Positions 18,709 through 64,000 of a DNA stretch of 64,000 bases are shown piece by piece (within the stretch, counting starts at the first letter, position 1; each line of letters starts with the position of its first letter). Position numbers and translations under genes: made by a program. Source of the DNA: Selaginella moellendorffii (taxonomy: Eukaryota; Plantae; Lycopodiophyta). The stretch is from contig NW_003314337.1 in assembly GCF_000143415.4 (NCBI RefSeq), positions 817,437-881,436 on the forward strand, given 5' to 3'. A model generated the notes under the pieces. That model did not search any database. It saw nothing but the letters and a program-made list of their open reading frames with translations, and was not told the origin of the DNA.

Positions 18709-18832
18709 AATCCGGCGAGATCGCTGAACGTGTATGTACATTCCCCATGTCCCAATGGGACTAATACAAAAAATGGGCGTGCCGCCCTCTCCATGAGCTA
18801 CTCTACGTGATCCTCATATGCCGCAGCTAGAC

Positions 18833-21800
18833 CTAGTCCTGGAGTAGAAGTGGACGTGGTCGTCTCGAGCGAATCATGTCGATGTCCAAGTCTCCCCCAC
18901 GAGCTGACCTTAGAACAGAGTCTGGGGGGCGCCATTGCCAGCGAATCTCGCCACCTCCCAATTTGCCGAAGCATGGGAGCCACCTAGATCTCCACTCCTC
19001 GAGCTGCCTCGGTTTCGCTCGCTCTTTCAGGATGGTGTAGTGAAGACGCACCGCTGCAAGAGTGAGTCTCCACCATGATGCCACCACTGCCGATATTCTC
19101 GCTTGTTGCCCATCAAAGCGACAGTGGTTCTGCGCCTCCCAAAGTGCCTGCAGTCCTGTTGCCCTCCAAATGGACCAGCGCTCTTGGCCCAACGCCTCCC
19201 AGATGGACATCCCAACTTCAGCCCCTGTCACGTCCCACCGGACTCGCATGTTCCATCGGTGCCGTCCGTAGCAGCGAATACGCCTCCAAGCTGGACCAAT
19301 GGCTGGGCCTCTGGCTCCCTCAAACCAGTGGAGGATATCCCCACTCCGAGCCTCAAACTCTGGAATGTCTCCGAGTTCCTGCGTCGCCTTGAAGATCTGT
19401 CGCCAAACTTCTCTCGCCACGTCGCATTCCCATAGGACATGTCGCGCTGTCTCCAACTCGCCTCACTACCGTCGGCATGCTTCTTCCTGGAACCGCTGTC
19501 CTACCGGCAGCCCGTTATTTGCCACCAACCAAGAGGTGGCCTTGACTTTCTCCTGTACCGGTAGTTTCCAGAACGCAAGCGTGTTGCCCACCACCTGATT
19601 TGCTTCAACTCCTTGCTCGATCCATTTCTTCCAGAGCTTGGGGATCTCCCCTCGGGCCTCCTCCCTGCTGGTCAAGAGACCATCCCTTGCTTCCTTGACG
19701 CCGAAGGAGAAGAAGCTCCTCGCTCCTCGTTTCCATGCTGCAGGGTCCCAGTCCAGATCCTCGATGAGCTGCTGTCGCCACCATCTAAGAATGCCTTCCC
19801 CCTCTAGTGCAGCCAACGATTGAACCACCACCGATTGCTTCGGAGCCTGTCGTATAACTCGAATCCTACCCTTGACCTCGTCATCCGTCACCATCGGCAT
19901 GACCTGTTCGTCCCCTGCTGGCAACAGCATGTCGCCTCTCAAGACTCGAAAAGGACACCCAACATTTTGGTCTGGAGACACAACGAACCATACCTCCACA
20001 TCCCTGTCCTCCCAAGCTGGTGTTGGGGCCGTGAACGCCCGTGTCCAGGCCCCCAAGCTACCTCATCCCCTGTCTGGCTCCACGTCCCGTTGCAGAGCCA
20101 CAAAGTCTCCAGATTTGAGACAACGCCTAGGCCAGAGCTGCCCCTGCTTCGCCTCACTCACTGCTCTGATAATGCGAAGAAGATCAAGGTGGACTTTCCT
20201 CCACCGTCCCGGGTTAAAGACCTGCATATGCCTCGTAGTCTTCCTCCTGTCCTTGTCCAGAACCCGCACCAGCTGCTTGAGAGTTCGGAAGCCTGCGCTA
20301 TGTAGCTTTCTCCAGATTGTGTAGTGGTCCTCCCTGCCCAGCGTCCTATCATCCAGTTTGAAGAGGTCGTTGAAGAACAGGGGCTGGTTCAGCCAGTCCT
20401 CCGCTCGCCCTGGCAATTCCCTGCTGACTGGAAATGCGCTCCATAACCGGAGAAACCCCTGGACTAGAGTGCCGCCCTTGACTACTTGTTTCGGCCCCTC
20501 GGCAAAGAGCCAACGTGGATCTTCTTCCCACGGTCTTGCAGTGTTGTGCTTGGGCCGGATTGCCAACAAGTTCTGCCTAAATATGAGTCTCCAAGGTTGA
20601 TTACCTGGTTGAAGGCCCATGAGGAGGATTTTGTACCGTAGCGCCTTCGCCATGTCACTCGGATCGATTACTCCAAGTCCTCCCAAGACTCGCGGACGTG
20701 CTGTAGATTGCCACGCGACCTTGGCCATGCTCCTCCCTGTGACCATCGTGCGTACCTTTCTAAGAGTGCGTTCTGGAACAGGCCAGATGGAGAGGTGGTA
20801 CCAGATGCCGGGCAGAATGATGCTCCTAGCGACTACCACTCTCGCTGGCAAGCCGAGTTTCCGGGGAGCCCACTTCTGGATTGACGTTCATACCCGTCGG
20901 AGCAAGGTGTCATCCTGAAGTGCTGCACTGAACCGAGTACCAACCTGGATCCCCAGGTACCTAGCGTCTTCTCCTGGTTTGAGCCACTGGAAGCCGATGT
21001 CCTGCCCCCAAGATTCGATGCCTGGTCGCCCCCAATTTATGCCCACTGATTTGTTCCAGTTAATTGCTGCACCAGCCGCGAGGTTGAACGTCTCCAACGC
21101 CTTCTTAGCTGCATCCATGTTCTCCTTAGTCACAAGTAGGAACAGGGCAGTGTCGTCCGCAAAAGCACCATCAAGGAGTTCCCGAGACACCCTTGTGGTT
21201 CCCGGAAGTTGCTGTCTCGCAGCCGGCAGTGTGAGTCCTTTAATGCGTCTGCCTTCCGCTAGAAACGTGCCCAGGGCCTCAGCCACAATCAGAAAAAGAT
21301 AGGGTGCTAGTGGACACCCTTGGCGTACTGAACGTCCCAACTGGAAACTCAGTCCCGTCTCGCCATTGATTGTGACTCTGCTTGCGGCTCCTCGGTACAG
21401 TAACGAGATCCTAGCGACCATCTCTCTCGGGATGCCAATCGTGTTCATGCACTCCTCTAGGAACCTCCAGTCCACCCGATCGTAGGCCTTCTCGAAGTCC
21501 AATAGCCATGCTGCAGTTTGTTGGTTAGAGATCTCTGCCCATCTCTGAGCCAACAGGTACGTCCAGATGTTCTCTGCGATTTGCCGCCCTGGAACAAACC
21601 CTGTTTGCTGCTCCCGGATGATCAGCGGCATGACAGCTTGGAGCTTGAGGGTCATTGCTTTGGCGTAGACCTTGTAGGACGTGTTGAGCATGGTGATTAG
21701 CCTCCAATTCTTCAGCTCCTGCAGGTCCCCCCTCTTTGGAATAAGCGCAATCTGGCCCTCAAGGATCTCACGAGGCAAGGTCCCATCACGTTGAGCATCC

Positions 21801-23317
21801 CACCATGCTTGTAGCAGCAGTGGGCCTATGGTCTCCCAGTGCTCCTCGAAGAAAATGGGCAAGAGGCCATCGATACCTGGCTGCTTGTCGTTGCTGAGCT
21901 TCCCGAGCGCTTCCCGAAGCTCCTCCAGTGTGAAGTCCGTCTTCAGTGAGTCGTGCCACTCATGGGGGACTCGCTGGGGAGGGGACGCAAGCACTTCCAC
22001 CGCCGCCCTTTCCCTCTCTGGAGTCCACTGCTGGGCCGTATATAGAAGTTGGTAAAACTCCTGGGCGAGCTGTTGCATCCCCTGTTGGTCCTCGACGACT
22101 CGCCCGTCACTGTGCTTCAGTCCTAGAATGGGAGGAGAGTCCGTCACTGGCCTGATTCCCCTAAAGAAAGCCTTGTTGAGAAGGCGTTCATTTAGGGCCC
22201 ATCCATCTTCCATGGCCCGGACGCCCTTGCTCCATACAGCGTACTCCATGTCACGTAGCTCGGCTTCACGTTCATCTAGTATTGTTTGCCAGTTGAACTC
22301 ATCTTGCGTGTTCAGCAACATCCTGTGTGCTGCTGCGACCTTCTTCCTGGCCAGTCTAAGGTCCTTCATCACCGCCCCTTTGAGATCCTTCTGGCGCGCC
22401 CGGAGCTTCTGTGAGCAAGACAAGAGCACAGGGATCAGCCCCAGCTTGTTCTGCGCAAGAGCGTTGTGTATAAGCCCAATCGCCACCGGGTCTCGCAGCG
22501 TGGCTCTAGTGATTGATCGCTGGACCGCTGTCCCTTTGTCCCTTTGGAGCTGGATCACGCATCTGAGGGGGTCGTGATCTGAGAAGGAGGCAAATCCCAG
22601 CCACGTTTTGAGGCTTCCCCCATCCTGCCGTATGCGAGATGAGGCGTAAATCCGGTCCAGTCTCGATTGGGAGGATACTGTTTGTCGCCTTGTAAAAGGG
22701 TGAGCGTGAGGTGCGAATCCCGCAGCATGCTGAAGGTCCATGAGCCCCAGTATGTCCATGAGCTGACTCCACTGCTTTTGTTCACGTGGCTGAATTGTTT
22801 CCTGCATACCCCTGCGATCACAGACGTCCTCGACCATGTTGAAATCTCCCAGGACCAGCCATTCATCTGCTTGCCCCTGGGCAGACTGTAACACACTCAG
22901 CCAGAATTCTGCACGTCTCCCTTTCTTGGTTGGTGCATAGACGTTGATTATCCCCACCCGTCCAAAGTGGAGGTGAAGGACAAGCAATTGAGCCTTTCCT
23001 GGGACGAGGACAAGGTGGTTTCGTACCTGAGCAGACCATTTGGTTGAGACTACCACTGCTGTGCCCCCTCCTGGTCTGGCCACTGCTTGCGTGGCCGGGT
23101 TCCACCAGAGCCGTCCCCTCATTCCAAAGGTGTAGTCTGGGGCCACAGTCATTTTGTGCTCTTGCAAGCATAGGATGTCGATATCTCCTTCTAAGCTGAT
23201 CTCCCGGATGTGGGACTTGAGCTGCGCCCTTTTGTTGAGTCGACTGCCGGACCAGCTGAGTCCCCGGCAGTTCCAGGTGACGAGCGTGAGAGTTGTCATG
23301 GAGCCACGTACTTCCAA
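18833..23317 (-). pseudogene. LINE A1 ORF2 (APE endonuclease - RT - C-terminal zinc finger), disabled
   Basis: Motifs TWNCRGL, CLQE, INVYAP, GDFN, RLDRIY, SDH; DFEKAYD, RQGCPL, FADD. Stops at 20888, 20063 and 19466; 30-bp deletion between GACCA repeats at ~20744 relative to A2. Confidence 0.92.
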
Positions 23318-25157
23318 GAGAGTGAGGAGTTACGGGGTCTCGCCCTCCATTCTGTGGAGATGGTCCACACCGCAGTCATCTTCCCCTTGTGCTTCGTCCA
23401 GGAGAAGCCTCGGACAGTGTACTTCGCAAAGCCCGTCCACTCAGTGATAGCACTCTCCATGCGTGTGTGGTAGTCTCCAATAGAGACGACCTCTGGGAAG
23501 GCTGTGTTCCCGCGGCACATCAGCCAGTCTCCCGCCTCTGTGGGACTTAATTCCCGCTTAGGGGGAATCCACCTGACCGCCATTCCTACTGTTCGAGGGA
23601 GGACCGGCTGGAAGCCATCTCCTTCGACATCCGTAATAGGTCCCTCGAACAGTTTGGGCTGTGAGGATGAGCCCAAGAGTGGTGGGGCGACCGGGAAGCG
23701 AATGTGGGGAGCTTGGTCCGGAGGGCGTGCCTTCAAGATCCGCTCCTGCTCTGCAGGTAACTCAAACGGCTTCTGGGATGCCAACCTGTTCCGCTTGACT
23801 GAGCAGGCCTCCCGGTGTCCAGCACGCTGACAAAAGTTGCATCTAGGTTCTGAGTTCTCCGTTTGGATCCTGATATACTGGCCCAGCACTGCGATCTCTG
23901 TCGGGATTTCAGCCGGGGCTGACACGAAAACTTTGAGGCGGATGGGACCTAGAACACCCTCTGCTTCTACAGTGTCGAGGCCGGCCGCTATCTGGCCGAT
24001 ACTTCCTTCAACCAGCTCCTGTATCACCAGTGTGATCCGCATTTCCATGGGAACGTCCCACAATGCAATGTTCACTGGAAAGCTCCCGCCCTTGAGACGA
24101 GCCTGGTCCTCTGCGGTGAACCTTGGGATCCATGGGTGGAATGACACCGCCCAATTCTCGTCAATGAGGCCATGCATGGCCTCCGCCTGAGACCGTGCCT
24201 CCTCTGTCTCAAAGACAACTGTGTAGCAGCCCTTTCCATGCGGCAGCATCATCTTCATGAGTATTCCCTGGCCTAGCGTTGCATTGATCCAATCGTTAGC
24301 CATGCGACCTGTTGGGAACTTCCCCCTGAAAACAGCGATCAGTGCCTTCTTGCGGAGTTCCTCTTCCTTCTCTGCTACTGCTCTTTGCAGAGTCTCGGCC
24401 AGCTTGACAGGGACCGCCTTTCCTCTTGTGTCGTCGTGGATCAAGTCACTTCCACCTTCCCCTGCTGCTGCCACCTTGTGCACTTCGGCCTGACCAGGTG
24501 TTCCCCCGTTCACGTTATGTGAGGTGTGCTCCTTGTTAACATCACTGTTCCCGTCCGAGGAGTGCGGCGCTTCCACCACCTTTCTGCAGCCCCGAGTCTT
24601 CCTCACTCTCGACTGGGCTTTTGCCACTCGCTCCGGGGTGTCAACCTCTTGGTTCTGGTGCACCCGAGACTCTGTCCTCTTGTCTGGCGGAGCGTGCTCC
24701 TCCTCAAGAAAGGCTTCAACTGTGTTTGTCCAGGCCGGGTCCTCCTTGGCAAGTCTCAGAGTTTTAAGCTTCCGCCGCGTTGCTCGCTTCACTTTCTTCT
24801 TCTCACGTTTGGTCTTCCTCTTGTTGAAGGCATCACGGTCCTGGAACTGAAGTGTGCCATCTGACTGTTCCTCCAGTGAGCGCTCCGTCTCTGGCTCCGT
24901 TTCTGGCTCTTCGAGTCCCTCTTCAACTGTTGGTGTTGGCATGGTATCCACCTTGCCACCTTGCTCTTGCGCCCATGCATCAAAGAGATCCGCTTGCTGT
25001 GTGGCCACTGCCTTCGTGATTAATTCTTGAGCTTGACGTAGTGCAGGTCCCAACACGAGGTCCTCTCCCAAAGGGTTCAGGTCCAGCTCTCTGATTGTGC
25101 ACATCAATGTTGACTGGAGTTCTTTGCGTACTGGAAGCGGAGAACTTTGGATCCTTT

Positions 25158-28100
25158 TGTGAGACACAAAATCCCTAGGCCCCAAAGTGGAGCCGGAAAG
25201 GGTGCCACGTGGTAGTGGCTGAAGCGAGAGCCAAACGAGTGTAACACGTTTGGACCAAAAGCTCCGACTTGAAAAGTCAAGAGCGGGAGTGGAACTCCCA
25301 ACGAAGTGCTCGAGGAACGAGCACGAAGCGAGCAAAAGGCGAGGCTCCAAAAAAGGGACCCAAAAAGGGCCAACACATGACACGTGGGAGTGTCCGAGAT
25401 GGACTCGAGTTGGAGTCCGAATTGGAGTCCGAGATGGACCCGAGTTGGAGTCCGAAGTGGAGTCCGAGATGGACCCGAGTTGGAGTCCGAAGTGGAGTCC
25501 GAGATGGACCCGAGTTGGAGTCCGAAGTGGAGTCCGAGATGGACCCGAGATGGAGTCCGAGATGGAGCCCGAGATGGAGTCCGAGATGGAGTCCGAGATG
25601 GACCCGAGATGGAGTCCAAGATGGAGTCCGAGGTGGACCCGAGGTGGACCCGAAATGGAGTCCGAGATGGACCCGAGATGGAGTCCGAGATGGAGTCCGA
25701 GATGGACCCGAGATGGACCCGAGATGGAGTCCGAGATGGAGTCCGAGATGGAGTCCGAGATGGAGTCCGAGATGGAGTCCGAAGTCGAGACCGAGACCGG
25801 GACCGAGCCCGAGACCGGGACCGAGACCGAGACCGAGGCCGAGGCCGAGACCAAGCCCGAGCCCGAGTCCGAGTCCGAGTCCGAGTCCGAGTCCGAGTCC
25901 GAGTCCGAGTCCGAGTCCGAGTCCGGAGCCTGAGAGGGTGAAAGCCCAAAGCGTTCGTCTCCCAGACCCTGGGGGGTTTGGTGAGCTCCAAAAGTATAGT
26001 AGGGGGAGGACTGCAGTGGAGCCAGTTTGGCCAGGAAAGGCCAGTTTGGCCCAGGAAGGCCGGACCCAGTGTTGGGTGATGAGCTGCCCACTGGGAAGTC
26101 CAAGACTAGAGTGAACACAGACCGACAAGCGGGGTAGCTTGGTGAAGTGTTCAAGAGCCGGCTCTAGTTCCCCCGGGAGATCGACTGGCCGATGCTCCCA
26201 GTCCAAGTGTGGGTGGCACTACCTACTTGGATACCTGGTGTGGCTCAACGGAACCCGCTCTAAGCCCATGGCTAGAGCACCTATGGGCAGAAGGCGAGGA
26301 GAGTACCCAGGTGGCTTGCGTAAGGCCACGGTGTTCCGAAATGTTGTCCCAAAGGCCCAGACTGTGGAAAGGAAGAGGAGCAGTCCTCTGGGGTGGTGAC
26401 CAAGGACACAGTCGGGTGGTGAGGAAGTCCCAGAGGACCGTGGGACTTAGTGGTCGGGCATGTGGGTCTCGATCCAGTGGCAGTGTTGGCAAACACGGCC
26501 AGGGGCAGAAAGGGACTTAGTGGGGATTGACAGAGGGATATTGGGGAAGGCTATTCCCCTTGTCGGTGGGCATCCTAAGGATGCTAAGGAGTGGATCTGA
26601 GATGACCACTCACGGATGGTTTGCCTAGTCTTGGAGAGCCAAGACTGGGATGCAAGTGGTATTGGACTACCAGTGTGGCAAAGGTGATTGGGCATGGCCT
26701 TAGCGTAACGGGCTGCTATGTCGGTGGTACCTTTGAGTGTCGGTCATGGGATCGGACACGTGGAGCACTTGGACCAAGTGCAAATGTTGAGTGGCATGGA
26801 TGCCATTCTTGGGGCTAGCAAGTCCCAAGTCCTGGATTGGACTTATGGAGGTTGTGAATGAGACTCCTCCAAGTGGTCGGAGGTGTGGTTAAGTGACTAA
26901 AGTAGAATGGAAAATTTAGTCGCTTACAATTTGGTATCGGAGCTGTTCCTTAGTCCGACTTTTATTGGTGCTCAAGTATATCACCACTAGTGTTGGCATC
27001 GGAAGGTCCGAGGAGTGGGCCTATCCTTGAGGAGTAGCAAGTCGGGAAGACATGGCTCTCCATTACAGTTCATGTGTGAACTTGTAGACGAGGTGGTGGA
27101 TAGAAAAGGGCCAATAATGGAACGACTTTGGGATCTTGGGAATAGTGCAAGGTTTTCCTCATTGAGTTGAGGATGTGATCCGGATGAGCATTTGTCTCAG
27201 CAAATTGGCTAAGGTTGTTGTGGTAAACAACTAAAGTTGGGATCACGGGAAAGATAGAGACTCCAAAACAATAAAGGAGTCACAAGATTATCCTCATATA
27301 GTTGAGGTTGGTGCTCATGAATGTGAGACCAGAGGTAATGACCGTGGGAGGTCAAATACGGAAGAGGACTCAAGTCCTTGAAATGGTAGCCGGGGCTACC
27401 TTTAATAAATGCTGGAACAACCCAAGGAGTTGGGGGGTGTACTTAGAGATGAGTGGTATTCTCATCACATGGACAAGTAGTCCTAAGGGGCAAAAGTTGC
27501 CTCTAGAGAACAAAAACAAGTGTCAGAGTAACACTTGTGAAAATAGTCCTTCTGAGTAGGGCAGGAATGCAGGAAGTGTATTCCAGTGAGCTAGTGCCTC
27601 ACAAGTGGGACCTTCCGGGTCTGTGGATGAACCAAGTCCAAAACTGCTGGATGACTCAAGTAGAGTCAAGGAAAGGTCCTAAAAGGACTGATTGAAGCAT
27701 TTGGACTGAGGTGTGTTGTACCCCATGAAGGATGGGGGGGGGATCATAGGATCCAAGGATGGGAACAGAGGGTATCTCATCGATGGCAAAATGTGCCATG
27801 CTAAAGTTATGGGAAAGGTGTTCCCAGAAGAAAACAACTTTGACACAAAGTTGTATGTGACCTCTATGGTGCAGTGCTAACGGATGGTTGGCATGAGAAA
27901 GAGCGGTGTTGGTCTTGGCAAAGACTTAAACACGAAGGGGAAGTGTCATAGAGGTAGGCTCGTGGAGCCGATGGTGTGGAGACACCAAATGTGCCAAGGT
28001 GTGATACCTTGAGGCTATGTTGGTGGGTTCATGAGAACCCCTTGCCAAAGGAATCCCAATGGAAATGGGAATGGCATAGCCTAAGCTGCAGAGCATGCAA

Positions 28101-42422: not shown

Positions 42423-42469
42423 CTGAAATGAAATGCGTTAGCATAAAAAATGGTACAAGTCAATTTTAC

Positions 42470-50174: not shown

Positions 50175-50359
50175 TAGTGCCACTAATGGCATGAGGGCTC
50201 ATGCCAATTTTGTGAATGCGAAATTTCACGTGGGTGTCAATAGCATGTTTGAATAATGGCATGTGGCCTCATGCTATTGAGGTTGTTTGGTATGTTATGA
50301 TTTAGGCCATTCTCCAATCATTTTTTGTATGGTCTTAACTTCTTTTCTGCACTTTCAGA

Positions 50360-53428: not shown

Positions 53429-55410
53429 TATTCCTTTACTAAGTTTCTAATGTATTTTATTTCAAGGTGAACAATCCGAATCTAAATCAGAGGAGGCGTG
53501 ATGGCATGTGGCCTTACGCCATTCCTAGGTGAGATGATACAAATAACAAGTATAAATTCTTAGTTGTTCTAGCAAATCTTACTTAAAGTTCAAGGTGAAC
53601 AAGCCAAATATGAATTCATCGGATTGTTATAACAAATTGCGAGGTGATGGCATGAGGCGATACGCCACTTGAGAGTGGTAGCCATTCTTATATGAGGTGA
53701 GTGAAATATTTATTAGAAATACCTCATTCAATTGTGCACTTCTAAGTCTTGGTCCACTCAGTACTGTTTGCATGTTTTTATTTTAATTCTTTATCTAAAA
53801 TGTTATTTAGCATGTGGCTTCATGCCATTGCTCTCCACAATCATGCATTGAATTTTTCTATCCTTGCATAATACTTCTCCATATATATAGCATGTGCGCA
53901 CATGTGATATGGTTCATTAGGCCTGATATAGTGTGTGAGGTAAAACAAAGATGATGTGATATATGCATTTACCAATCACACGTGCATAAATCTAATAATA
54001 TGGTGTGTGGCCAATATTAATGGCACATAAACCCATATTGTGGGCTTACGTGCTTTATGTACCATCATTCCCTCTCAGCGTGTGTGTTGGTTTCCTTTTA
54101 TAACACAACGAACTCCATATTTTAGGGTGAAGAGTGTTCTCATGGCAAGCACAAAATCTGTAAGTGAGGCAGTAGAATATATAAGTCTTCCAAACTCCCC
54201 GTACTATACTCCAGGTGATCATTTTTCTGAACAAACGGCAACATTAACAACTATCGAGAACGCCCCAGTAACGTCAGAGACAACAATCCAAAGCAAAACA
54301 ACTGACCCGGAGAAGGATGATAGTACCGCTGAGAGTACCAAAAAGGAGGTGTCCACTAGCGCTTAGGCTTATAATGGCGTGTGCCCTCATGCCATTTACT
54401 TGATCACCAAATACCTTTTTCCCTTTGCACTAGTATATCTTAATACCGGTCTGAGAAATAGAATGGCATGTGCCCTCAGGCCTTTTACTAAATCACCTTT
54501 GAAAGAAATGCAAGCCTCTATGTCGTAAAAAAAAGGTACTAGAGAAATTCCTTAATAATATGAATGTTATTTAGTTTCATGAAAATACACTAAGGGTCAA
54601 ATGAGTTAAACGACTTCTCCAGACTAGCAATGCCTCTTGCTACACCTTCACAATTAGATTCGTTAGAAAAAGATAACATTGAATAATATCTAAATGTTCT
54701 CACCATTAAGTTATATATCTAGCTAATAGGAATGACGTTCATCTTGGAAAGCTCACCACACGCTCAATGAACAAACAAATAATGTGTGCGTGCATGCCAT
54801 CGCTCTTCTTTAGCTTCAGATTCGGCTTGTTCACCTTGACAATGAGATTTATTATACAACCAGATGGACTCAGTCTGGACACAAAGTCACCGCGCTAGTC
54901 ACCATGCCCCAGATATGTCTAGCCCCTGGACAAAAAACATATAATTTCATGTCATTTTCAAATACTTGAAAATTTGTACCTAGTCCCATTTTACTGAATA
55001 AATCCCACTTTAACGAAATAGAGCTTAATTCCCGCTTAGGGGGAATCCACCTGACCGCCATTCCTACTGTTCGAGGGAGGACCGGCTGGAAGCCATCTCC
55101 TTCGACATCCGTAATAGGTCCCTCGAACAGTTTGGGCTGTGAGGATGAGCCCAAGAGTGGTGGGGCGACCGGGAAGCGAATGTGGGGAGCTTGGTCCGGA
55201 GGGCGTGCCTTCAAGATCCGCTCCTGCTCTGCAGGTAACTCAAACGGCTTCTGGGATGCCAACCTGTTCCGCTTGACTGAGCAGGCCTCCTCCCGGTGTC
55301 CAGCACGCTGACAAAAGTTGCATCTAGGTTCTGAGTTCTCCGTTTGGATCCTGATGTACTGGCCCAGCACTGCGATCTCTGTCGGGATTTCAGCCGGGGC
55401 TGACACGACC

Positions 55411-56930
55411 AATCCGGCGAGATCGCTGAACGTGTATGTACATTCCCCATGTCCCAATGGGACTAATACAAAAAATGGGCATGCCGCCCTCTCCATGAGC
55501 TACTCTACGTGATCCTCATATGCCGCAGCTAGACCTAGTCCTGGAGTAGAAGTGGACGTGGTCATCTGGAGCGAATCATGTCGATGTCCAAGTCTCCCCC
55601 ACGAGCTGACCTTAGAACAGAGTCTGGGGGGCGCCATTGCCAGCGAATCTCGCCACCTCCCAATTTGCCGAAGCATGGGAGCCACCTAGATCTCCACTCC
55701 TCGAGCTGCCTCGGTTTCGCCCGCTCTTTCAGGATGGTGTAGTGAAGACGCACCGCTGCAAGAGTGAGTCTCCACCATGATGCCACCACTGCCGATATTC
55801 TCGCTTGTTGCCCATCAAAGCGACAGTGGTTCCGCGCCTCCCAAAGTGCCTGCAGTCCTGTTGCCCTCCAAATGGACCAGCGCTCTTGGCCCAACACCTC
55901 CCAGATGGACATCCCAACTTCAGCCCCTGTCACGTCCCACCGGACTCGCATGTTCCATCGGTGCCGTCCGTAGCAGCGAATACGCCTCCAAGCTGGACCA
56001 ATGGCTGGGCCTCTAGCTCCCTCAAACCAGTGGAGGATATCCCCACTCCGAGCCTCAAACTCTGGAATGTCTCCGAGTTCCTGCGTCGCCTTGAAGATCT
56101 GTCGCCAAACTTCTCTCGCCACGTCGCATTCCCATAGGACATGTCGCGCTGTCTCCAGCTCGCCACACTCCTTGCACCGTCGGCATGCTTCTTCCTGGAA
56201 CCGCTGTCCTACCGGCAACCCGTTATTTGCCACCAACCAAGAGGTGGCCTTGACTTTCTCCTGTACCGGTAGTTTCCAGAACGCAAGCGTGTTGCCCACC
56301 ACCTGATTTGCTTCAACTCCTTGCTCGATCCATTTCTTCCAGAGCTTGGGGATCTCCCCTCGGGCCTCCTCCCTACTGGTCAAGAGACCATCCCTTGCTT
56401 CCTTGACGCCGAAGGAGAAAAAGCTCCTCGCTCCTCGTTTCCATGCTGCGGGGTCCCAATCCAGATCCTCGATGAGCTGCTGTCGCCACCATCTAAGAAT
56501 GCCTTCCCCCTCTAGTGCGGCCAACGATTGAACCACCACCGATTGTTTCGGAGCCTGTCGTATTACTCGAATCCTACCCTTGACCTCGTCATCCGTCACC
56601 ATCGGCATGACCTGTTCGTCCCCTGCTGGCAACAGCATGTCGCCTCTCAAGACTCGAAAAGGACGCCCAACATTTTGGTCTGGAGACACAACGAACCATA
56701 CCTCCACATCCCTGTCCTCCCAAGCTGGTGTTGGGGCCGTAAACGCCCGTGTCCAGGCCCCCAAGCTAACTCGTTCCCTGTCTGACTCCACGTCCCGTTG
56801 CAGAGCCACAAAGTCTCCAGATTTGAGACAACGCCTAGGCCAAAGCTGCCCCTGCTTCGCCTCACTCACTGCTCTGATAATGCGAAGAAGATCAAGGTGG
56901 ACTTTCCTCCACCGTACCGGGTTAAAGACA
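55411..56930 (-). mobile_element. LINE A copy 3, 5'-truncated (1.5 kb)
   Basis: 3' end of ORF2 (55562-56929) plus the shared terminus. Confidence 0.93.
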
Positions 56931-58636
56931 AATCCGGCGAGATCGCTAAACATATATGTACATTACCCCAATCCCAAAGGGATCAAAACTACATTGAGAG
57001 CGCACTCTCGAAGAAACTAGTGAAACTATGAGCGCGAACGCCCGGCGCTGCTCTTGGGCCGTCCGCCTCCCAGGTGACTCCACCGCGGAGCTTGAAGCCA
57101 CCTGCTTCGCCTCGCCACTCCTCCACTCGATCACAATGATGCCAAGCCAGACGAACACCATGTCGATCTAGCTCGACGTCGTCGCAGCCAAGCGGTCCAA
57201 CTCGAGCACGATGACCCAGCGTCGCTCATGGGTCACTCGCCTCCAAGGTGACTCCACTGCACAAGCTGAAGCCACCTGTTACGCCCCAAGACGTGATGCT
57301 GTGTCTTGGAGCGCCTACCTCCCCAGTGTACTTCCAGCACTAAGTCAGTGCCCATTGCGAGCAAACTCCAAGGCGTAGAACAAGCAAGGTGTGAGCCTCC
57401 TCCAGCTCTAGACTAGAGCGTGCTATCTTGCCTCCCACACTAGACAAGTGCGCTGGCCCCCTTCAATGATATACGAGCCCCCGTTGCCGGCATCGCGACA
57501 ATCACAAGACTTGCAAGCCTCCGCAAACCTCCTCAAAGGACTAGCCCTGAAGCAAGAACCATGTGGGATTCCCTCCGCGAGCAAACCAACTCGGCCATCC
57601 GCCACTGGCCCCCTTTGTGACAGCACTTCCCTGTCACTAGATCCAAAAATGCGCCCATAGTGTCTTCCACGTCCATCCACCACGGACACTTCGCTATGTC
57701 GAGATGTCGTCCCGAACTGTCCTCCACCAGTCAACAAAGATCCCATGACTTGGTCGTGTTTCCACGACTCAAGTCGCCAAGAACTTCCGACACATGCAGC
57801 TTCACGCTCTCCGTACCTTAGTCGCCACCTTGCATGGCCCGACCTAAGGCGAGAAATCCCGCTCGAAGCTGCGAGACCAGCAACCGTCGCGTTTCCACCA
57901 TGTTGCTGCCGTGCCAACCACATGCAACGAAGATCCCTGACACTTAGAGTGGCCGGATCGAAGATCCCGCCGCCACCCTAAGTCCTGCCCTAACCGCAGT
58001 TAGCCAAGAACCCTAACCCTAGCCACGAATTAGGACAGGTGAGAACTCTGAGACCGTGAAGAATTTTTGCCTGCGCTTCTGGGAGGGTGTGAGGCTCCCT
58101 CCCAGCTATGCCCCTGTGAATTTTTGTGCAAAAAATTCCAAGCCGTTCAGGAGTTATGAGCTCCCAAAAAACTTGAAACCATGAGAAGCGAAAAAAGAAG
58201 AGGAGGAGAGGAGAGCGTCCAGCTGCTGCAGCCGTGGTGTTCCTGACTGCCCTCTCCACTCCTCCAAATCTCTAAGCCCCGAAAAACCCTAGCCGCCGCC
58301 GAAGAACCCTAAAAACAGCAGCGACCTAGGGCCAGCGAGATCTCCAGATCCGTGGCAGATCTCGCCGCGGCCTTCTAGGAGGATGAGAATCTACACTCCT
58401 AGAAGCCCCCCGTCGAAGGAATCGAGGTTTCTCCCAGCCGTTTGGGAGATATCGATAAAAACGACAGAGAGCGAGAGAGAAGAGGAGAAAGAGGAGGGAG
58501 ACGAGCTCCGTGTGTTGCTGCCGCGGTCTGCGATGCTTGTGCCGCCCTGGACGCTCGCTCCCTCCCTCTTTCTCACACTCTCTCTCTAGCGCCTTCGAGC
58601 TCTCTCCTCAAACAACTTAGGGCTTTTGCGCGCGCA
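56931..58636 (-). mobile_element. Element B copy 2 (longest copy, probably full length, 1.7 kb)
   Basis: Ends TTAGGGCTTTTGCGCGCGC on the + strand, resembling the A1 5' end. Confidence 0.9.
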
Positions 58637-59631
58637 AATCCGGCGAGATCGCTAAACATATATGTACATTACCCCAATCCCAAAGGGATCAAAACTACAT
58701 TGAGAGCGCACTCTCGAAGAAACTAGTGAAACTATGGGCGCAAACGCCCGGCGCTGCTCTTGGGCCGTCCGCCTCCCAGGTGACTCCACCGCGGAGCTTG
58801 AAGCCACCTGCTTCGCCTCGCCACTCCTCCACTCGATCACAATGATGCCAAGCCAGACGAACACCATGTCGATCTAGCTCAACGTCGTCGCAGCCAAGCG
58901 GTCCAACTCGAGCACGATGACCCGGCGTCGCTCATGGGTCACTCGCCTCCAAGGTGACTCCACTGCACAAGCTGAAGCCACCTGTTACGCCCCAAGACGT
59001 GATGCTGTGTCTTGGAGCGCCTACCTCCCCAGTGTACTTCCAGCACTAAGTCAGTGCCCATTGCGAACAAACTCCAAGGCGTAGAACAAGCAAGGTGTGA
59101 GCCTCCTCCAGCTCTAGACTAGAGCGTGCTACCTTGCCTCCCACACTAGACAAGTGCGCTGGCCCCCTTCAATGATATACAAGCCCCCGTTGCCGGCATC
59201 GCGACAATCACAAGACTTGCAAGCCTCCGCAAACCTCCTCAAAGGACTAGCCCTGAAGCAAGAACCATGTGGGATTCCCTCCGCGAGCAAACCAACTCGG
59301 CCATCCGCCACTGGCCCCCTTTGTGACAGCACTTCCCTGTCACTAGATCCAAAAATGCGCCCATAGTGTCTTCCACGTCCATCCACCACGGACACTTCGC
59401 TATGTCGGGATGTCGTCCCGAACTGTCCTCCACCAGTCAACAAAGATCCCATGACTTGGTCGTGTTTCCACGACTCAAGTCGCCAAGAACTTCCGACACA
59501 TGCAGCTTCACGCTCTCCGTACCTTAGTCGCCACCTTGCATGGCCCGACCTAAGGCGAGAAATCCCGCTCGAAGCTGCAAGACCAGCAACCGTCGCGTTT
59601 CCACCATGTTGCTGCCGTGCCAACCACACAA
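58637..59631 (-). mobile_element. Element B copy 3, 5'-truncated
   Basis: Homology to B stops at CAACCACA. Confidence 0.9.
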
Positions 59632-61307
59632 AATCCGGCGAGATCGCTAAACATATATGTACATTACCCCAATCCCAAAGGGATCAAAACTACATTGAGA
59701 GCGCACTCTCGAAGAAACTAGTGAAACTATGAGCGCGAACGCCCGGCGCTGCTCTTGGGCCGTCCGCCTCCCAGGTGACTCCACCGCGGAGCTTGAAGCC
59801 ACCTGCTTCGCCTCGCCACTCCTCCACTCGATCACAATGATGCCAAGCCAGACGAACACCATGTCGATCTAGCTCGACGTCGTCGCAGCCAAGCGGTCCA
59901 ACTCGAGCACGATGACCCAGCGTCGCTCATGGGTCACTCGCCTCCAAGGTGACTCCACTGCACAAGCTGAAGCCACCTGTTACGCCCCAAGACGTGATGC
60001 TGTGTCTTGGAGCGCCTACCTCCCCAGTGTACTTCCAGCACTAAGTCAGTGCCCATTGCGAGCAAACTCCAAGGCGTAGAACAAGCAAGGTGTGAGCCTC
60101 CTCCAGCTCTAGACTAGAGCGTGCTACCTTGCCTCCCACACTAGACAAGTGCGCTGGCCCCCTTCAATGATATACGAGCCCCCGTTGCCGGCATCGCGAC
60201 AATCACAAGACTTGCAAGCCTCCGCAAACCTCCTCAAAGGACTAGCCCTGAAGCAAGAACCATGTGGGATTCCCTCCGCGAGCACACCAACTCGGCCATC
60301 CGCCACTGGCCCCCTTTGTGACAGCACTTCCCTGTCACTAGATCCAAAAATGCGCCCATAGTGTCTTCCACGTCCATCCACCACGGACACTTCGCTATGT
60401 CGAGATGTCGTCCCGAACTGTCCTCCACCAGTCAACAAAGATCCCATGACTTGGTCGTGTTTCCACGACTCAAGTCGCCAAGAACTTCCGACACATGCAG
60501 CTTCACGCTCTCCGTACCTTAGTCGCCACCTTGCATGGCCCGACCTAAGGCGAGAAATCCCGCTCGAAGCTGCGAGACCAGCAACCGTCGCGTTTCCACC
60601 ATGTTGCTGCCGTGCCAACCACATGCAACGAAGATCCCTGACACTTAGAGTGGCCGGATCGAAGATCCCGCCGCCACCCTAAGTCCTGCCCTAACCGCAG
60701 TTAGCCAAGAACCCTAACCCTAGCCACGAATTAGGACAGGTGAGAACTCTGAGACCGTGAAGAATTTTTGCCTGCGCTTCTGGGAGGGTGTGAGGCTCCC
60801 TCCCAGCTATCCCCCTGTGAATTTTTGTGGAAAAATTCCAAGCCGTTCAGGAGTTATGAGCTCCCAGAAAACTTGAAACCATGAGAAGCGAAAAAAGAAG
60901 AGGAGGAGAGGAGAGCGTCCAGCTGCTGCAGCCGTGGTGTTCCTGACTGCCCTCTCCACTCCTCCAAATCTCTAAGCCCCGAAAAACCCTAGCCGCCGCC
61001 GAAGAACCCTAAAAACAGCAGCGACCTAGGGCCAGCGAGATCTCCAGATCCGTGGCAGATCTCGCCGCGGCCTTCTAGGAGGATGAGAATCTACACTCCT
61101 AGAAGCCCCCCGTCGAAGGAATCGAGGTTTCTCCCAGCCGTTTGGGAGATACCGATAAAAACGACAGAGAGCGAGAGAGAAGAGGAGAAAGAGGAGGGAG
61201 ACGAGCTCCGTGTGTTGCTGCCGCGGTCTGCGATGCTTGTGCCGCCCTGGACGCTCGCTCCCTCCCTCTTTCTCACACTCTCTCTCTAGCGCCTTCGAGC
61301 TCTCTCA
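59632..61307 (-). mobile_element. Element B copy 4 (lacks the last ~30 nt of the 5' end)
   Basis: Same end point as B copy 0. Confidence 0.9.
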
Positions 61308-63084
61308 AATCCGGCGAGATCGCTGAACGTGTATGTACATTCCCCATGTCCCAATGGGACTAATACAAAAAATGGGCGTGCCGCCCTCTCCATGAGCTAC
61401 TCTACGTGATCCTCATATGCCGCAGCTAGACCTAGTCCTGGAGTAGAAGTGGACGTGGTCGTCTCGAGCGAATCATGTCGATGTCCAAGTCTCCCCCACG
61501 AGCTGACCTTAGAACAGAGTCTGGGGGGCGCCATTGCCAGCGAATCTCGCCACCTCCCAATTTGCCGAAGCATGGGAGCCACCTAGATCTCCACTCCTCG
61601 AGCTGCCTCGGTTTCGCCCGCTCTTTCAGGATGGTGTAGTGAAGACGCACCGCTGCAAGAGTGAGTCTCCACCATGATGCCACCACTGCCGATATTCTCG
61701 CTTGTTGCCCATCAAAGCGACAGTGGTTCCGCGCCTCCCAAAGTGCCTGCAGTCCTGTTGCCCTCCAAATGGACCAGCGCTCTTGGCCCAACGCCTCCCA
61801 GATGGACATCCCAACTTCAGCCCCTGTCACGTCCCACCGGACTCGCATGTTCCATCGGTGCCGTCCGTAGCAGCGAATACGCCTCCAAGCTGGACCAATG
61901 GCTGGGCCTCTGGCTCCCTCAAACCAGTGGAGGATATCCCCACTCCGAGCCTCAAACTCTGGAATGTCTCCGAGTTCCTGCGTCGCCTTGAAGATCTGTC
62001 GCCAAACTTCTCTCGCCACGTCGCATTCCCATAGGACATGTCGCGCTGTCTCCAACTCGCCACACTCCTTGCACCGTCGGCATGCTTCTTCCTGGAACCG
62101 CTGTCCTACCGGCAGCCCGTTATTTGCCACCAACCAAGAGGTGGCCTTGACTTTCTCCTGTACCGGTAGTTTCCAGAACGCAAGCGTGTTGCCCACCACC
62201 TGATTTGCTTCAACTCCTTGCTCGATCCATTTCTTCCAGAGCTTGGGGATCTCCCCTCGGGCCTCCTCCCTGCTGGTCAAGAGACCATCCCTTGCTTCCT
62301 TGACGCCGAAGGAGAAGAAGCTCCTCGCTCCTCGTTTCCATGCTGCGGGGTCCCAATCCAGATCCTCGATGAGCTGCTGTCGCCACCATCTAAGAATGCC
62401 TTCCCCTTCTAGTGCAGCCAACGATTGAACCACCACCGATTGTTTCGGAGCCTGTCGTATTACTCGAATCCTACCCTTGACCTCGTCATCCGTCACCATC
62501 GGCATGACCTGTTCGTCCCCTGCTGGCAACAGCATGTCGCCTCTCAAGACTCGAAAAGGACACCCAACATTTTGGTCTGGAGACACAACGAACCATACCT
62601 CCACATCCCTGTCCTCCCAAGCTGGTGTTGGGGCCGTAAACGCCCGTGTCCAGGCCCCCAAGCTAACTCGTTCCCTGTCTGACTCCACGTCCCGTTGCAG
62701 AGCCACAAAGTCTCCAGATTTGAGACAACGCCTAGGCCAGAGCTGCCCCTGCTTCGCCTCACTCACTGCTCTGATAATGCGAAGAAGATCAAGGTGGACT
62801 TTCCTCCACCGTCCCGGGTTAAAGACCTGCATATGTCTCGTAGTCTTCCTCCTGTCCTTGTCCAGGACCCGCACCAGCTGCTTGAGAGTTCGGAAGCCTG
62901 CGCTATGTAGCTTTCTCCAGATTGTGTAGTGGTCCTCCCTGCCCAGTGTCCTTTCATCCAGTTTGAAGAGGTCGTTGAAGAACAGGGGCTGGTTCAGCCA
63001 GTCCTCCGCTCGCCCTGGCAATTCCCTACTGACTGGAAACGCGCTCCATAACCGGAGAAGCCCCTGGACTAGAGTGCCGCCCTA
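61308..63084 (-). mobile_element. LINE A copy 4, 5'-truncated (1.8 kb), open ORF2 C-terminus
   Basis: ORF 61432-63021 is nearly identical to the A2 C-terminus. Confidence 0.93.
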
Positions 63085-63972
63085 AATCCGGCGAGATCGC
63101 TAAACATGTATGTACATTACCCCAATCCCAAAGGGATCAAAACAACATTGAGAGCGCACTCTCGAAGAGACTAGTGAAACTATGAGCGCGAACGCCCGGC
63201 GCTGCTCTTGGGCCGTCCGCCTCCCAGGTGACTCCACCGCGGAGCTTGAAGCCACTTGCTTCGCCTTGCCACTCCTCCACTCGGTCACAATGATGACAAG
63301 CCAGACGAACACCATGTCGATCTAGCTCGATGTCGTCGCAGCCAAGTGGTCCAACTCGACCACGATGACCCGGCGTTGCTCATGGGTCACTCGCCTCCAA
63401 GGTGACTCCACTGCACAAGCTGAAGCCACCTGTTACGCCCCAAGACGTGATGCTGTGTCTTGGAGCGCCTACCTCCCCAGTGTACTTCCAGCACTAAGTC
63501 GGTGCCCATTACGAACAAACTCCAAGGCGTAGAACAAGCGAGGTGTGAGCCTCCTCCAGCTCTAGACTAGAGCGTGCTACCTTGCCTCCCACACTAGACA
63601 AGTGCGCTGGCCCCCTTCAATGATATACGAGCCCCCGTTGCCGGCATCGCGACAATCACAAGACTTGCAAGCCTCCGCAAACCTCCTCAAAGGACTAGCC
63701 CTGAAGCAAGAACCATGTGGGATCCCCTCCGCGAGCAAACCAGCTCGGCCATCCGCCACTGGCCCCCTTTGTGACAGCACTTCCCTGTCACTAGATCCAA
63801 AAATGCGCCCATAGTGTCTTCCACGTCCATCCACCGCGGACACTTCGCTATGTCGGGATGTCGTCCCGAACTGTCCTCCACCAGTCAACAAAGTTCCCAT
63901 GACTTGGTCGTGTTTCCACGACTCAAGTCGCCAAGAACCTCCGACACATGCAGCTTCACGCTCTCCGTACTA
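63085..63972 (-). mobile_element. Element B copy 5, 5'-truncated
   Basis: Homology to B stops at CCGTAC. Confidence 0.9.
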
Positions 63973-64000
63973 AATCCGGCGAGATCGCTAAACATGTATG
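63973..64000 (-). mobile_element. 3' terminus of the next unit (B-type), running off the window
   Basis: AATCCGGCGAGATCGCTAAACATGTATG. Confidence 0.8.

What the first reader, a model, noticed from the sequence alone, without database searches (positions are those of the whole stretch)
18709..64000. Polarised head-to-tail array of a LINE and its non-autonomous partner: a HeT-A/TART-like system in a plant
Seen: ten junctions (18709, 34551, 36249, 55411, 56931, 58637, 59632, 61308, 63085, 63973) each begin AATCCGGCGAGATCGCT. At each, an intact 3' end abuts the variably truncated 5' end of its neighbour. All units are on one strand, with no spacer, no conventional TSD, no poly(A), and no A or B unit split by another A or B. 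Known: this is the architecture of Drosophila telomeric HeT-A/TART/TAHRE arrays; Zepp-like L1 clusters in green algae instead nest within each other. Inference, three models: (a) RT extends a free chromosome end, with the + strand as cDNA and the end lying toward higher coordinates; (b) the endonuclease targets the element's own terminal motif; (c) serial template jumping. I know of no described land-plant equivalent; it could be a retrotransposon-built telomere/subtelomere or centromere.
Basis: partly seen in the sequence, partly recalled or inferred. Interest (0 to 1): 0.92.

Follow-up and report, generated by a model that had tools for sequence, protein, structure and literature searches.

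The report
Self-stacking LINE array in a clubmoss
A jumping gene of the LINE type and a short helper-dependent partner have repeatedly landed exactly behind each other's tails in a Selaginella genome, building a one-directional stack that resembles the LINE clusters at green-algal centromeres more than it resembles fly telomeres.

Summary
The 17-mer occurs ten times, always on the + strand (0.01 expected). Each copy is the exact 3' end of a minus-strand unit and abuts the 5' end of the next unit. Unit A is an L1-type LINE (APE endonuclease, RT, zf-RVT; 8.2 kb). Unit B (1.7 kb) has no recognisable or constrained coding capacity. B shares only A's last 52 nt and a ~25-nt 5' leader. Eight of the nine complete junctions are distinct, with different truncation points and 1-3 nt fillers, so the array grew by repeated retrotransposition. 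One junction pair (U1|U0 and U8|U7) is a re-copied A-to-B composite. An LTR retrotransposon and a 13.9-kb DNA transposon, each flanked by a target-site duplication, sit inside units. The window is from Selaginella; its other repeats are 94-97% identical to S. moellendorffii.

The HeT-A/TART reading is only partly supported. No evidence places the array at a chromosome end. The endonuclease motifs are intact, unit divergence shows no gradient, and junctions carry no telomere repeats or oligo(A). The best explanation is target-primed insertion aimed at the family's own 3' terminus. I could fetch no other genomic copy, so chromosomal location and solitary-copy flanks remain untested.

The parts
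18247..18708 (-). U0: B unit, sense positions 26-486. The 5' end carries filler T. The 3' part is missing because of a junction with an internal point of an unrelated repeat at 18246/18247.
18709..34550 (-). U1: full-length A (8185 bp once the nested LTR element is discounted). It has a 5' leader, an ORF1 region with no recognisable domain, and ORF2 with APE, RT and zf-RVT. ORF2 carries three in-frame stops.
25158..32809 (+). LTR retrotransposon nested in U1. It has no long ORF. LTRs are about 1.78 kb and 99.2% identical. The target-site duplication is CCTTT.
34551..36248 (-). U2: full-length B (1698 bp). Its 5' leader has a small internal deletion.
36249..55410 (-). U3: A from sense position 2967 to the end, with filler GG. 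It contains a 1325-aa RT-to-C-terminus ORF (36373-40350) and a frameshift between APE and RT.
41131..55023 (.). 13.9-kb DNA transposon nested in U3. It has 21-bp terminal inverted repeats, a flanking duplication CTTAAT(T), and an 839-aa DUF7869 ORF at 50360-52879.
55411..56930 (-). U4: A from about sense position 6673 to the end, with filler T(G).
56931..58636 (-). U5: near-full-length B (from position 9), plus 13 nt of the A-like 5' leader.
58637..59631 (-). U6: B from position 707 to the end, with filler TTG.
59632..61307 (-). U7: B from position 26 to the end, with filler T. This is the downstream half of the composite U8-U7, which repeats the U1-U0 junction.
61308..63084 (-). U8: A from position 6416 to the end, with filler T. 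This is the upstream half of the composite U8-U7.
63085..63972 (-). U9: B from position 813 to the end, with filler TA. It belongs to a divergent B subfamily (20 private substitutions in 888 nt).
63973..64000 (-). U10: the last 28 nt of a B-type tail, of the same variant as U9. The array runs off the end of the window.

Best explanation
A is an L1-clade LINE without a poly(A) tail, and B is a non-coding passenger. B carries A's 5' leader and A's 3' recognition tail: a 5-bp stem-loop, a TGTACA-containing stretch, and the invariant terminal 17 nt. The A-encoded ORF2 protein binds this tail in the RNA. It then starts target-primed reverse transcription at a nick placed exactly at the end of a resident copy's tail. 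This means the endonuclease or RNP recognises the family's own terminal sequence in DNA. Each new copy therefore lands directly downstream of an intact tail. Its own 3' end is complete. Its 5' end is full-length or truncated and is sealed with a few, mostly T, filler nucleotides. Repetition at any tail in the cluster gives a one-strand, spacer-free stack in which no body is ever split. Occasional read-through transcripts (A into the next B) are copied as composites. What is shown: the anatomy, the independence of eight of the nine complete junctions, the shared tail, the intact EN motifs, and the re-copied composite. What is inferred: that the tail itself is the DNA target and that insertion is intercalary.
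For: Ten of ten tails are complete to the last base, while 5' ends vary, which is the signature of TPRT rather than DNA duplication. Eight of the nine complete junctions are distinct. The repeated one (U1|U0 = U8|U7) is bounded on both outer sides by element-type junctions, as expected for a retrotransposed read-through composite and not for a segmental duplication. A and B are 17/17 identical at the terminus. Their similarity is 85-87% over 52-53 nt and nil further in, apart from the ~25-nt 5' leader. The outer pair of the stem-loop changes G-C to A-U in a compensatory way. APE motifs N, E, Y, D/N, D and SDH are intact in both long A copies. No A or B body is interrupted by A or B, although A/B DNA makes up about 24 kb of the region. 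Young and old units interleave, as intercalary insertion predicts: private substitutions are 20, 1, 4, 8, 3, 11, 10, 18, 5, 1 for U9 to U0. As a precedent, Zepp L1 elements target existing copies and give tandem arrays of 3' ends (PMC8226300). Tail-to-internal tandems of non-LTR elements are attributed to repeated insertion at one site (10.1101/158386). Transposition of composite cassettes is reported for MoTeR arrays (10.1101/845669).
Against: No solitary copy, empty target site or second array could be retrieved. So it is not shown that the tail, rather than an external sequence or a DNA end, is the target. The array's own 3' flank is lost. The age argument is confounded by subfamily differences, since U9 and U10 share a tail variant, and by possible gene conversion. 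Both long A copies are defective, so no active master is in view. Invariance of the 17-mer across ten copies is not in itself significant at about 1% divergence.
Confidence: 0.5

Rival explanations
1. Free-end extension (HeT-A/TART-like). The array sits at a chromosome end that lies toward higher coordinates. Each unit was reverse-transcribed onto the eroding terminus, and erosion explains the 5' truncations.
For: The geometry is the same as Drosophila telomere arrays: single orientation and an intact 3' end joined to a truncated 5' end. The array runs off the high-coordinate end of the window. The full-length 5' leader contains a 9-nt telomere-repeat-like AAACCCTAA, which could seed telomerase on the complementary strand. 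The nested foreign transposons lie in the low-coordinate, presumed older, part.
Against: There are no telomere repeats in the array, and the only run belongs to a DNA transposon family. EN motifs are intact, although TART also keeps an APE domain. Divergence is not monotonic: the most divergent unit, U9, is at the supposed distal side. The sense strand is G-rich, so the strand running 5' to 3' toward the supposed end would be C-rich, opposite to telomere polarity, and there are no G4 motifs. Junctions have no oligo(A), and B encodes no Gag. The AAACCCTAA motif is also the common plant promoter telo-box (my own knowledge).
Confidence: 0.12
2. Fixed external target. The endonuclease recognises a host or repeat sequence that once flanked the array's 3' edge. 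Every insertion went into that same site, so the array grew only at its low-coordinate end, in the way R1 tandems form in rDNA.
For: Repeated insertion at one specific site is the documented route to R1 tandems (10.1101/158386). The two lowest-coordinate units (U0, U1) are among the least diverged. The flank that could disprove this is missing.
Against: Units U5, U7 and U8, which are far from that edge, are as young as or younger than U0 and U1, while U2-U4 between them are older. No target remnant or duplication separates the units, unlike the 33-nt rDNA duplications between R1 copies. The tail has no detectable origin in a host RNA gene.
Confidence: 0.15
3. Few insertion events, followed by concatenation. 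Serial template jumping by the RT from one RNA to the 3' end of another, read-through composites, and later DNA-level amplification or gene conversion produced most of the stack.
For: One composite (A tail, T, B position 26) is present twice. Non-templated filler nucleotides at junctions are what template-jumping RTs leave (the R2 biochemistry is from my own knowledge). U5 and U7 differ by only 0.2-0.4%. In the 5' region U5 groups with U2, while in the 3' region it groups with U7, which hints at mosaicism.
Against: Units that would have to belong to one event differ several-fold in private substitutions, for example U6 at 0.8% between U5 and U7 at about 0.2%. Template jumps normally start from template 5' ends, yet most junctions are at internal positions. 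Only one junction is repeated, so there is no higher-order repeat.
Confidence: 0.12
4. Assembly artefact: reads from dispersed copies were mis-joined.
For: The units are 97-99.6% identical and 1-1.7 kb long, which is a hard case for assemblers. The family is absent from the protein sets derived from the older S. moellendorffii assembly.
Against: Every junction falls at the exact element terminus with its own truncation point and filler. Units carry private substitutions. Two foreign transposons with clean target-site duplications are nested inside units. Mis-joins would not respect element ends.
Confidence: 0.03

Closest known systems
Zepp (Coccomyxa subellipsoidea C-169) and ZeppL (Chlamydomonas and relatives): self-targeting L1-clade LINEs forming centromeric clusters
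   Same: Both are L1-clade APE+RT LINEs. New copies target existing copies, and clusters consist mostly of 5'-truncated 3' ends in tandem (PMC8226300). Other TEs are mixed in. The clusters are local GC-rich islands (PMC3446292). Here GC is about 56%, against 40-47% in parts of the left flank.
   Different: Zepp clusters are described as nested. Here insertion is strictly at the terminal nucleotide, so no body is split. From memory of Higashiyama 1997, which I could not read, Zepp carries a poly(A) tail; this element has a unique 3' tail and no poly(A). No non-autonomous partner is described in the passages I read. The host here is a vascular plant. Phylogenetic affinity to Zepp was not tested, and neither was location (one cluster per chromosome, CENH3 binding).
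Drosophila HeT-A / TART / TAHRE telomere arrays
   Same: Both are polarised head-to-tail arrays of an autonomous element and a dependent one. Intact 3' ends are joined to variably truncated 5' ends. Tail-to-internal junctions arise from consecutive insertions.
   Different: The Drosophila elements are Jockey clade rather than L1, and their junctions carry oligo(A). HeT-A encodes Gag, whereas B encodes nothing recognisable. Terminal location and telomerase loss are defining there and unknown here. Divergence here shows no proximal-to-distal order.
MoTeR1 / MoTeR2 of Magnaporthe oryzae
   Same: An RT-encoding element and a 1.7-kb partner form mixed arrays with truncated copies, and transposition of composite cassettes is inferred (10.1101/845669).
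   Different: MoTeR junctions carry interstitial telomere repeats, and the arrays lie within telomeres. Here no telomere repeats occur at any junction. From my own knowledge, the MoTeR endonuclease is restriction-like, not APE.
R1 tandem arrays and other site-specific LINEs (R1, R2, Tx1 group, TRAS/SART)
   Same: These have a precise 3' junction, no requirement for poly(A), and repeated insertion at one sequence that yields tandems.
   Different: Their target is a host multicopy sequence, and remnants of it separate the copies. Here nothing but 1-3 filler nucleotides separates the units, and the only recurring sequence at the insertion point is the element's own tail.
Stringent-type LINE/SINE pairs that share a 3' tail (e.g. 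UnaL2/UnaSINE1; from my own knowledge)
   Same: The partner shares only the terminal ~50 nt, including a stem-loop, with the LINE. There is no poly(A).
   Different: B is 1.7 kb and has no tRNA, 5S or 7SL head. Instead it shares the LINE's own 5' leader. The copies are stacked, not dispersed.

Membership tests
L1-clade non-LTR retrotransposon (unit A) | N-terminal APE-type endonuclease with catalytic motifs | tested here: met
   Pfam Exo_endo_phos, E 4e-16 and 8e-15. N, E, Y, D/N, D and SDH motifs were read in both copies.
L1-clade non-LTR retrotransposon (unit A) | RT domain closest to L1 ORF2p, plus a C-terminal Cys-rich domain | tested here: met
   RVT_1 at E 1e-25 and zf-RVT at E 5e-8. The best PDB match is human L1 ORF2p at E 2.5e-42, against R2 at 6e-13.
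L1-clade non-LTR retrotransposon (unit A) | Poly(A) or A-rich 3' end, and target-site duplications | tested here: not met
   The tail ends ...CGCCGGATT in 10 of 10 copies with no A-run. No duplications flank units inside the array.
L1-clade non-LTR retrotransposon (unit A) | Recognisable ORF1 (RRM, zinc-knuckle or coiled-coil type) | tested here: inconclusive
   ORFs upstream of ORF2 (32695-34350 and the stretch up to 23296) have no Pfam hit at E<=0.01 and are broken.
Telomeric retrotransposon array of the HeT-A/TART kind | Head-to-tail, one orientation, intact 3' end on truncated 5' end | tested here: met
Telomeric retrotransposon array of the HeT-A/TART kind | Located at the chromosome terminus with 5' ends distal | not testable with these tools
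   The source chromosome is unknown, and no plant genome collection is searchable. There is no terminal repeat in the window.
Telomeric retrotransposon array of the HeT-A/TART kind | Age decreases toward the end (terminal addition only) | tested here: not met
   Private substitutions are non-monotonic from U0 to U9. Subfamily structure confounds this, so the result is weak.
Telomeric retrotransposon array of the HeT-A/TART kind | Non-RT partner encodes a targeting Gag | tested here: not met
   The B ORF (166 aa) has no Pfam hit. It shows 10 nonsynonymous and 7 synonymous variable codons, and the same variability inside and outside the ORF.
Zepp/ZeppL-type self-targeting L1 cluster | New copies insert into or at existing copies, giving tandem 3'-end-rich clusters | tested here: met
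   Eight distinct element-to-element junctions were found (of nine complete), and 7 of 11 units are 3' fragments. The definition comes from PMC8226300.
Zepp/ZeppL-type self-targeting L1 cluster | Phylogenetic grouping with Zepp within L1 | not tested
   No Zepp sequence was available by reference. The only close relative found is a Selaginella protein at 69-74% identity.
Zepp/ZeppL-type self-targeting L1 cluster | One cluster per chromosome, CENH3-bound | not testable with these tools
   This needs the whole assembly and ChIP data.
Telomere-repeat-targeting elements (TRAS/SART, MoTeR, Athena PLEs) | Telomere repeats at element junctions | tested here: not met
   There is no (TTTAGGG)n or (TTAGGG)n run of 2 or more units at any junction.
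Penelope-like elements (which also form partial tandems) | GIY-YIG endonuclease or EN-less telomerase-like RT; hammerhead ribozyme | tested here: not met
   The endonuclease is APE-type. No ribozyme reached Rfam thresholds.
LINE-dependent non-autonomous partner (unit B) | Shares the LINE's 3' recognition tail and lacks RT | tested here: met
   The last 52-53 nt are 85-87% identical, including 17/17 at the terminus, and there is no other similarity. No protein domain was found.

The most novel reading that the evidence does not exclude
A vascular plant carries a Zepp-like, self-stacking L1 system, complete with a dedicated non-coding passenger, that builds a specialised chromosomal domain: a LINE-based centromere as in Chlamydomonas and Coccomyxa, or a retrotransposon-built chromosome end. 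This would extend LINE-defined chromosome architecture from green algae into land plants. The self-recognition would rest on an endonuclease that cuts precisely at its own 17-nt terminus.
Probability: 0.2. Interest if true: 0.85.

Novelty: new variant of a known kind. Interest (0 to 1): 0.6.

Why it matters
LINE clusters that target themselves are known to mark the CENH3-bound centromeres of several green algae. Retrotransposon stacks replace telomerase repeats in flies. Reviews of plant transposon niches list no LINE equivalent in land plants (PMC12477314).

This array adds three things. It shows that an L1-type element with a strictly terminal self-insertion rule exists in a lycophyte. It offers a very clean natural substrate for working out how an APE-type endonuclease achieves single-nucleotide target precision: one 17-nt tail, no poly(A), and an autonomous and passenger pair. 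And it gives a direct handle (the 17-mer) for asking whether Selaginella centromeres or chromosome ends are built from it. If the family turns out to be just a local pile-up in heterochromatin, it is still a useful, but modest, addition to the catalogue of site-specific LINEs.

Tried and rejected
1. Finding other genomic copies led nowhere. Exact look-up of eight window ORFs returned nothing. The word-indexed search with the ORF2 C-terminal 300 aa returned nothing. The search with the 809-aa APE+RT ORF gave only distant hits. The exhaustive representative search gave only the sister-family protein P0001. A metagenome scan for the tail found 0 matches.

2. The sister LINE in S. moellendorffii scaffold GL377652.1 (L001) is cut by the same DNA transposon family before its 3' end. 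Its tail and flank could therefore not be read. It appears solitary, 5'-truncated and embedded in an LTR.

3. A host RNA gene origin for the tail or the 17-mer was rejected. There were no Rfam hits at gathering thresholds, no tRNAs, and only sub-threshold miRNA-like hits on a GA/TC hairpin.

4. A known ribozyme defining the unit ends was not found.

5. A Penelope-like element, which also forms partial tandems, was rejected because the endonuclease is APE-type.

6. Plain DNA tandem duplication or a higher-order repeat was rejected because only one junction recurs.

7. Microhomology at the 5' joins was not seen. Fillers are T-biased instead.

8. The thermodynamic significance of the tail fold is weak, with z-scores of -1.9 and -1.5.

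9. Higashiyama 1997 and Yamamoto 2003 (the primary Zepp papers) are not held in the library.

10. A phylogeny against Zepp was not done, because no Zepp sequence was available by reference.

Full report
**1. Observation**

The 17-mer AATCCGGCGAGATCGCT occurs exactly ten times, at the coordinates given. Every copy is on the + strand without mismatch, and relaxing to three mismatches adds none. Shuffles give 0.01-0.10 matches. A self-comparison of the window, and mapping of the two longest units onto the window, resolve the stretch 18247-64000 into eleven colinear units, U0 to U10. Each starts, on the + strand, with the 17-mer and ends at a variable point.

**2. What the units are**

The coding strand is the minus strand, so the 17-mer is the reverse complement of the element's 3' terminus (...AGCGATCTCGCCGGATT-3').

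Unit A:
- Its longest copy is U1 (18709-34550), which is 8185 bp once a nested LTR element is discounted.
- It encodes an APE-type endonuclease, a reverse transcriptase and a zf-RVT domain.
- Its best solved-structure relative is human L1 ORF2p at E 2.5e-42, far ahead of R2.
- All APE catalytic motifs are present in both long copies.
- Neither long copy is intact. U1 has three in-frame stops in ORF2. U3 has a frameshift between APE and RT.

Unit B:
- It is 1698 bp (U2, 34551-36248) and shares only the last 52-53 nt with A, at 85-87% identity with the terminal 17 nt identical.
- It also shares a ~25-nt 5' leader of the form GCATTGCGCGC-AAAA-CCCTAA.
- Within the shared tail, a 5-bp stem-loop is kept through one compensatory change (G-C in A, A-U in B), read directly. 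The fold is not thermodynamically exceptional.
- B's 166-aa ORF has no Pfam match. It shows 10 nonsynonymous against 7 synonymous variable codons. It varies as much as the rest of B: 8 of 500 sites inside the ORF, 17 of 1174 outside. I take B as non-coding.
- B has no tRNA, 5S or 7SL head.

**3. Junction anatomy**

In sense order the stack reads U10 B, U9 B[813-], U8 A[6416-], U7 B[26-], U6 B[707-], U5 B[9-], U4 A[~6673-], U3 A[2967-], U2 B full, U1 A full, U0 B[26-486].

- Every tail is complete to the last base.
- Truncated 5' ends carry short fillers: T, T, T(G), TA, TTG, GG.
- Five of the six independent fillers begin with T, which is unlikely for a base with a frequency of 19-24% (roughly 0.003 by my own binomial estimate). 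The two untruncated 5' ends, U1 and U2, start with G and show no such T. This fits non-templated addition at the end of a prematurely ended cDNA, or a 1-nt target duplication. I cannot tell which.
- I saw no microhomology.
- There is no poly(A), no telomere repeat and no recurring spacer.

**4. Independence of events**

Eight of the nine complete junctions are distinct. The exception is informative. U1|U0 and U8|U7 share the same internal junction (A tail, T, B position 26) and align across it at 98.8%. U0 and U7 differ at 1 of 462 sites, and U1 and U8 at 13 of 1514. The outer ends of U8-U7 are themselves normal element junctions: a 5' truncation at A 6416 with filler T, and an intact B tail. 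This is what a read-through A-to-B transcript would give if it were reverse-transcribed from the B tail. It is not what a segmental duplication would give. A comparable 'composite cassette' transposition is inferred for MoTeR arrays.

**5. The array is real genomic DNA that has aged in place**

An LTR retrotransposon (25158-32809) sits in U1. Its LTRs are 99.2% identical and its target duplication is CCTTT. A 13.9-kb inverted-repeat DNA transposon (41131-55023) sits in U3, flanked by CTTAAT(T). Units also carry private substitutions. An assembly artefact is very unlikely, but only long reads can exclude it.

**6. Organism**

The closest protein is an uncharacterised Selaginella moellendorffii protein, at 74% identity over the RT and zf-RVT region. 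It is also the only strong hit among 1.84 billion representatives for the ORF2 C-terminal half. The locus that encodes it (L001, scaffold GL377652.1) shares the window's other repeat families at 94-97% identity, but its LINE is a different family at about 72%. The window is therefore from S. moellendorffii or a close relative. The A/B family itself is absent from every protein collection I could query and from the metagenome collection. No second array, solitary copy or empty site could be examined.

**7. Testing the three models within the window**

(a) Free-end extension predicts age falling toward high coordinates, and it tolerates a dead endonuclease.
- Private substitutions per unit are: U0 1/462, U1 5/1514, U2 18/1674, U3 10/1514, U4 11/1514, U5 3/1674, U6 8/995, U7 4/1674, U8 1/1514, U9 20/888.
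- These are not monotonic in either direction. The caveat is that U9 and U10 share a tail variant and so represent a B subfamily, which means part of U9's count predates its insertion.
- The endonuclease motifs are intact.
- The sense strand is G-rich, with GC skew +0.09 in A and +0.16 in B. Under model (a) the strand running toward the end would then be C-rich, the reverse of telomere polarity. There are no G-quadruplex motifs.
- The only telomere-like run, (CCCTAAA)4 at 48798-48825, lies inside the DNA transposon and recurs in that family's copy in L001.
- The AAACCCTAA in the A leader is a telomere-repeat 9-mer, but it is also the ordinary plant telo-box promoter motif (my own knowledge).

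Model (a) is not excluded, because the window does not tell where it lies on the chromosome. Nothing positively supports it.

(b) Endonuclease targeting comes in two forms.
- A fixed external site at the array's 3' edge predicts age rising with coordinate. It fails on the same mosaic pattern. The flank that could settle it was lost, because U0 is joined at 18246/18247 to an internal point of an unrelated repeat that reads on in its other copy near 13462.
- Targeting of the family's own tail, at any resident copy, explains five things. It explains the perfect tails and the absence of split bodies across about 24 kb of A/B DNA. It also explains the interleaving of young and old units, the single orientation, and the perfect A-B identity of the terminal 17 nt next to a region that has drifted.

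(c) Template jumping can account for fillers and for some neighbours. It cannot account for neighbours of clearly different divergence, or for junctions at internal template positions.

I therefore favour self-targeted TPRT at about 0.5. The external-site, free-end and concatenation models have a combined probability of about 0.4.

**8. Comparison with known systems**

[quoted passage not shown] There is one cluster per chromosome in Coccomyxa (PMC3446292). CENH3 associates with ZeppL in Chlamydomonas (10.1101/2025.03.28.645958), and with L1-rich centromeres in Chlorella (PMC11005252). Zepp/ZeppL is the closest known behaviour, and it is also in the L1 clade.

This system differs from it in four ways:
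- Insertion is strictly at the terminal nucleotide.
- The element has a unique, non-poly(A) tail.
- It has a dedicated passenger element.
- Its host is a land plant.

HeT-A/TART shares the geometry only. MoTeR1/2 shares the idea of an autonomous element with a 1.7-kb partner, but its junctions carry telomere repeats. R1 tandems keep rDNA target remnants between copies. A 2025 review of plant transposon niches lists only Penelope-like elements (in S. moellendorffii) and Retand as telomere-associated plant elements. The passages I retrieved from it mention no LINE arrays (PMC12477314). My other searches found no description of such an array in Selaginella or other land plants. The library is incomplete, and Repbase could not be consulted.

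**9. Verdict**

The LINE-plus-partner reading is supported. The telomere analogy is an untested possibility with mild evidence against it. The closest known kind is the self-targeting Zepp-type L1 cluster.

I classify the finding as a new variant of a known kind and score interest at 0.6. It would rise sharply if genome-wide mapping showed one array per chromosome or terminal arrays. It would fall if the family proved to be mostly dispersed.

**10. Housekeeping**

For coordinate mapping only, I used a copy of U1 with the nested LTR element excised. 

Noticed in passing
window 41131-55023; L001 12775-22658: A 13.9-kb DNA transposon with 21-bp terminal inverted repeats (CTCTATTTCGTTAAAGTGGGA) and a flanking CTTAAT(T) duplication. 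It has an 839-aa ORF with Pfam DUF7869 (50360-52879), an 859-aa ORF with no domain, and a weak NIF-phosphatase-like ORF. A copy at 91-97.5% identity interrupts the sister LINE in S. moellendorffii scaffold GL377652.1. Its superfamily was not determined.
   Followed up: partly
window 48798-48825; L001 16001-16014: A (CCCTAAA)4 plant-telomere-type run lies inside the DNA transposon and is conserved in the family's other copy. It is therefore an internal feature of the transposon and not a chromosome end.
   Followed up: yes
window 25392-25935, 31260-31815, 8283-8753, 5406-5660: The LTRs of the nested LTR retrotransposon and of a related copy at 5755-9749 contain long 12-nt (GTCCGAGATGGA) and 35-nt tandem arrays of about 0.4-0.5 kb.
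   Followed up: no
window 659-4546 (minus strand): An uninterrupted 1295-aa Ty3/gypsy-type polyprotein ORF (gag, zinc knuckle, protease, RT, RNase H, integrase). This may be a young, intact element.
   Followed up: no
window 36084-36212 (B sense positions ~40-165), and the same region in U0, U5 and U7: The 5' region of B folds into a long GA/TC-rich hairpin (-64 kcal/mol, z-score -2.2). It gives sub-threshold Rfam hits to miRNA precursors (mir-3156 at 28 bits, MIR156 at 25 bits, well below the gathering scores). This is probably compositional, but it could be a source of small RNAs.
   Followed up: partly
window 18246/18247 and 13400-13462: The left end of the array is not an insertion boundary. 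An internal point of an AT-rich non-coding repeat, which reads on in its other copy near 13462, is fused to B position 486. This indicates a deletion or illegitimate recombination that removed the array's original 3' flank.
   Followed up: partly
window 9751-18246: This is a complex non-coding repeat nest. The segment 9751-10904 resembles 12223-13354 (88%). The segment 10906-12023 is an inverted copy of 13939-15063 (97.4%). The same families occur rearranged in L001 2824-8675.
   Followed up: no
window 34520-34550 (A 5' leader), 58613-58636 and 36225-36248 (B leaders): Full-length 5' ends begin with a GC-rich leader followed by AAACCCTAA (A) or AGCCCTAAG (B). This is a telo-box or telomere-repeat-like motif at the presumed transcription start. 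Leader length varies between copies: U2 has an internal deletion of about 10-12 nt plus 3 extra nt, and U5 lacks the first 4 nt.
   Followed up: partly
window 38292-38316: U3 carries an extra ~25 bp relative to U1 within ORF2, and the two alignment blocks overlap by 5 nt. This is a small duplication or insertion.
   Followed up: no
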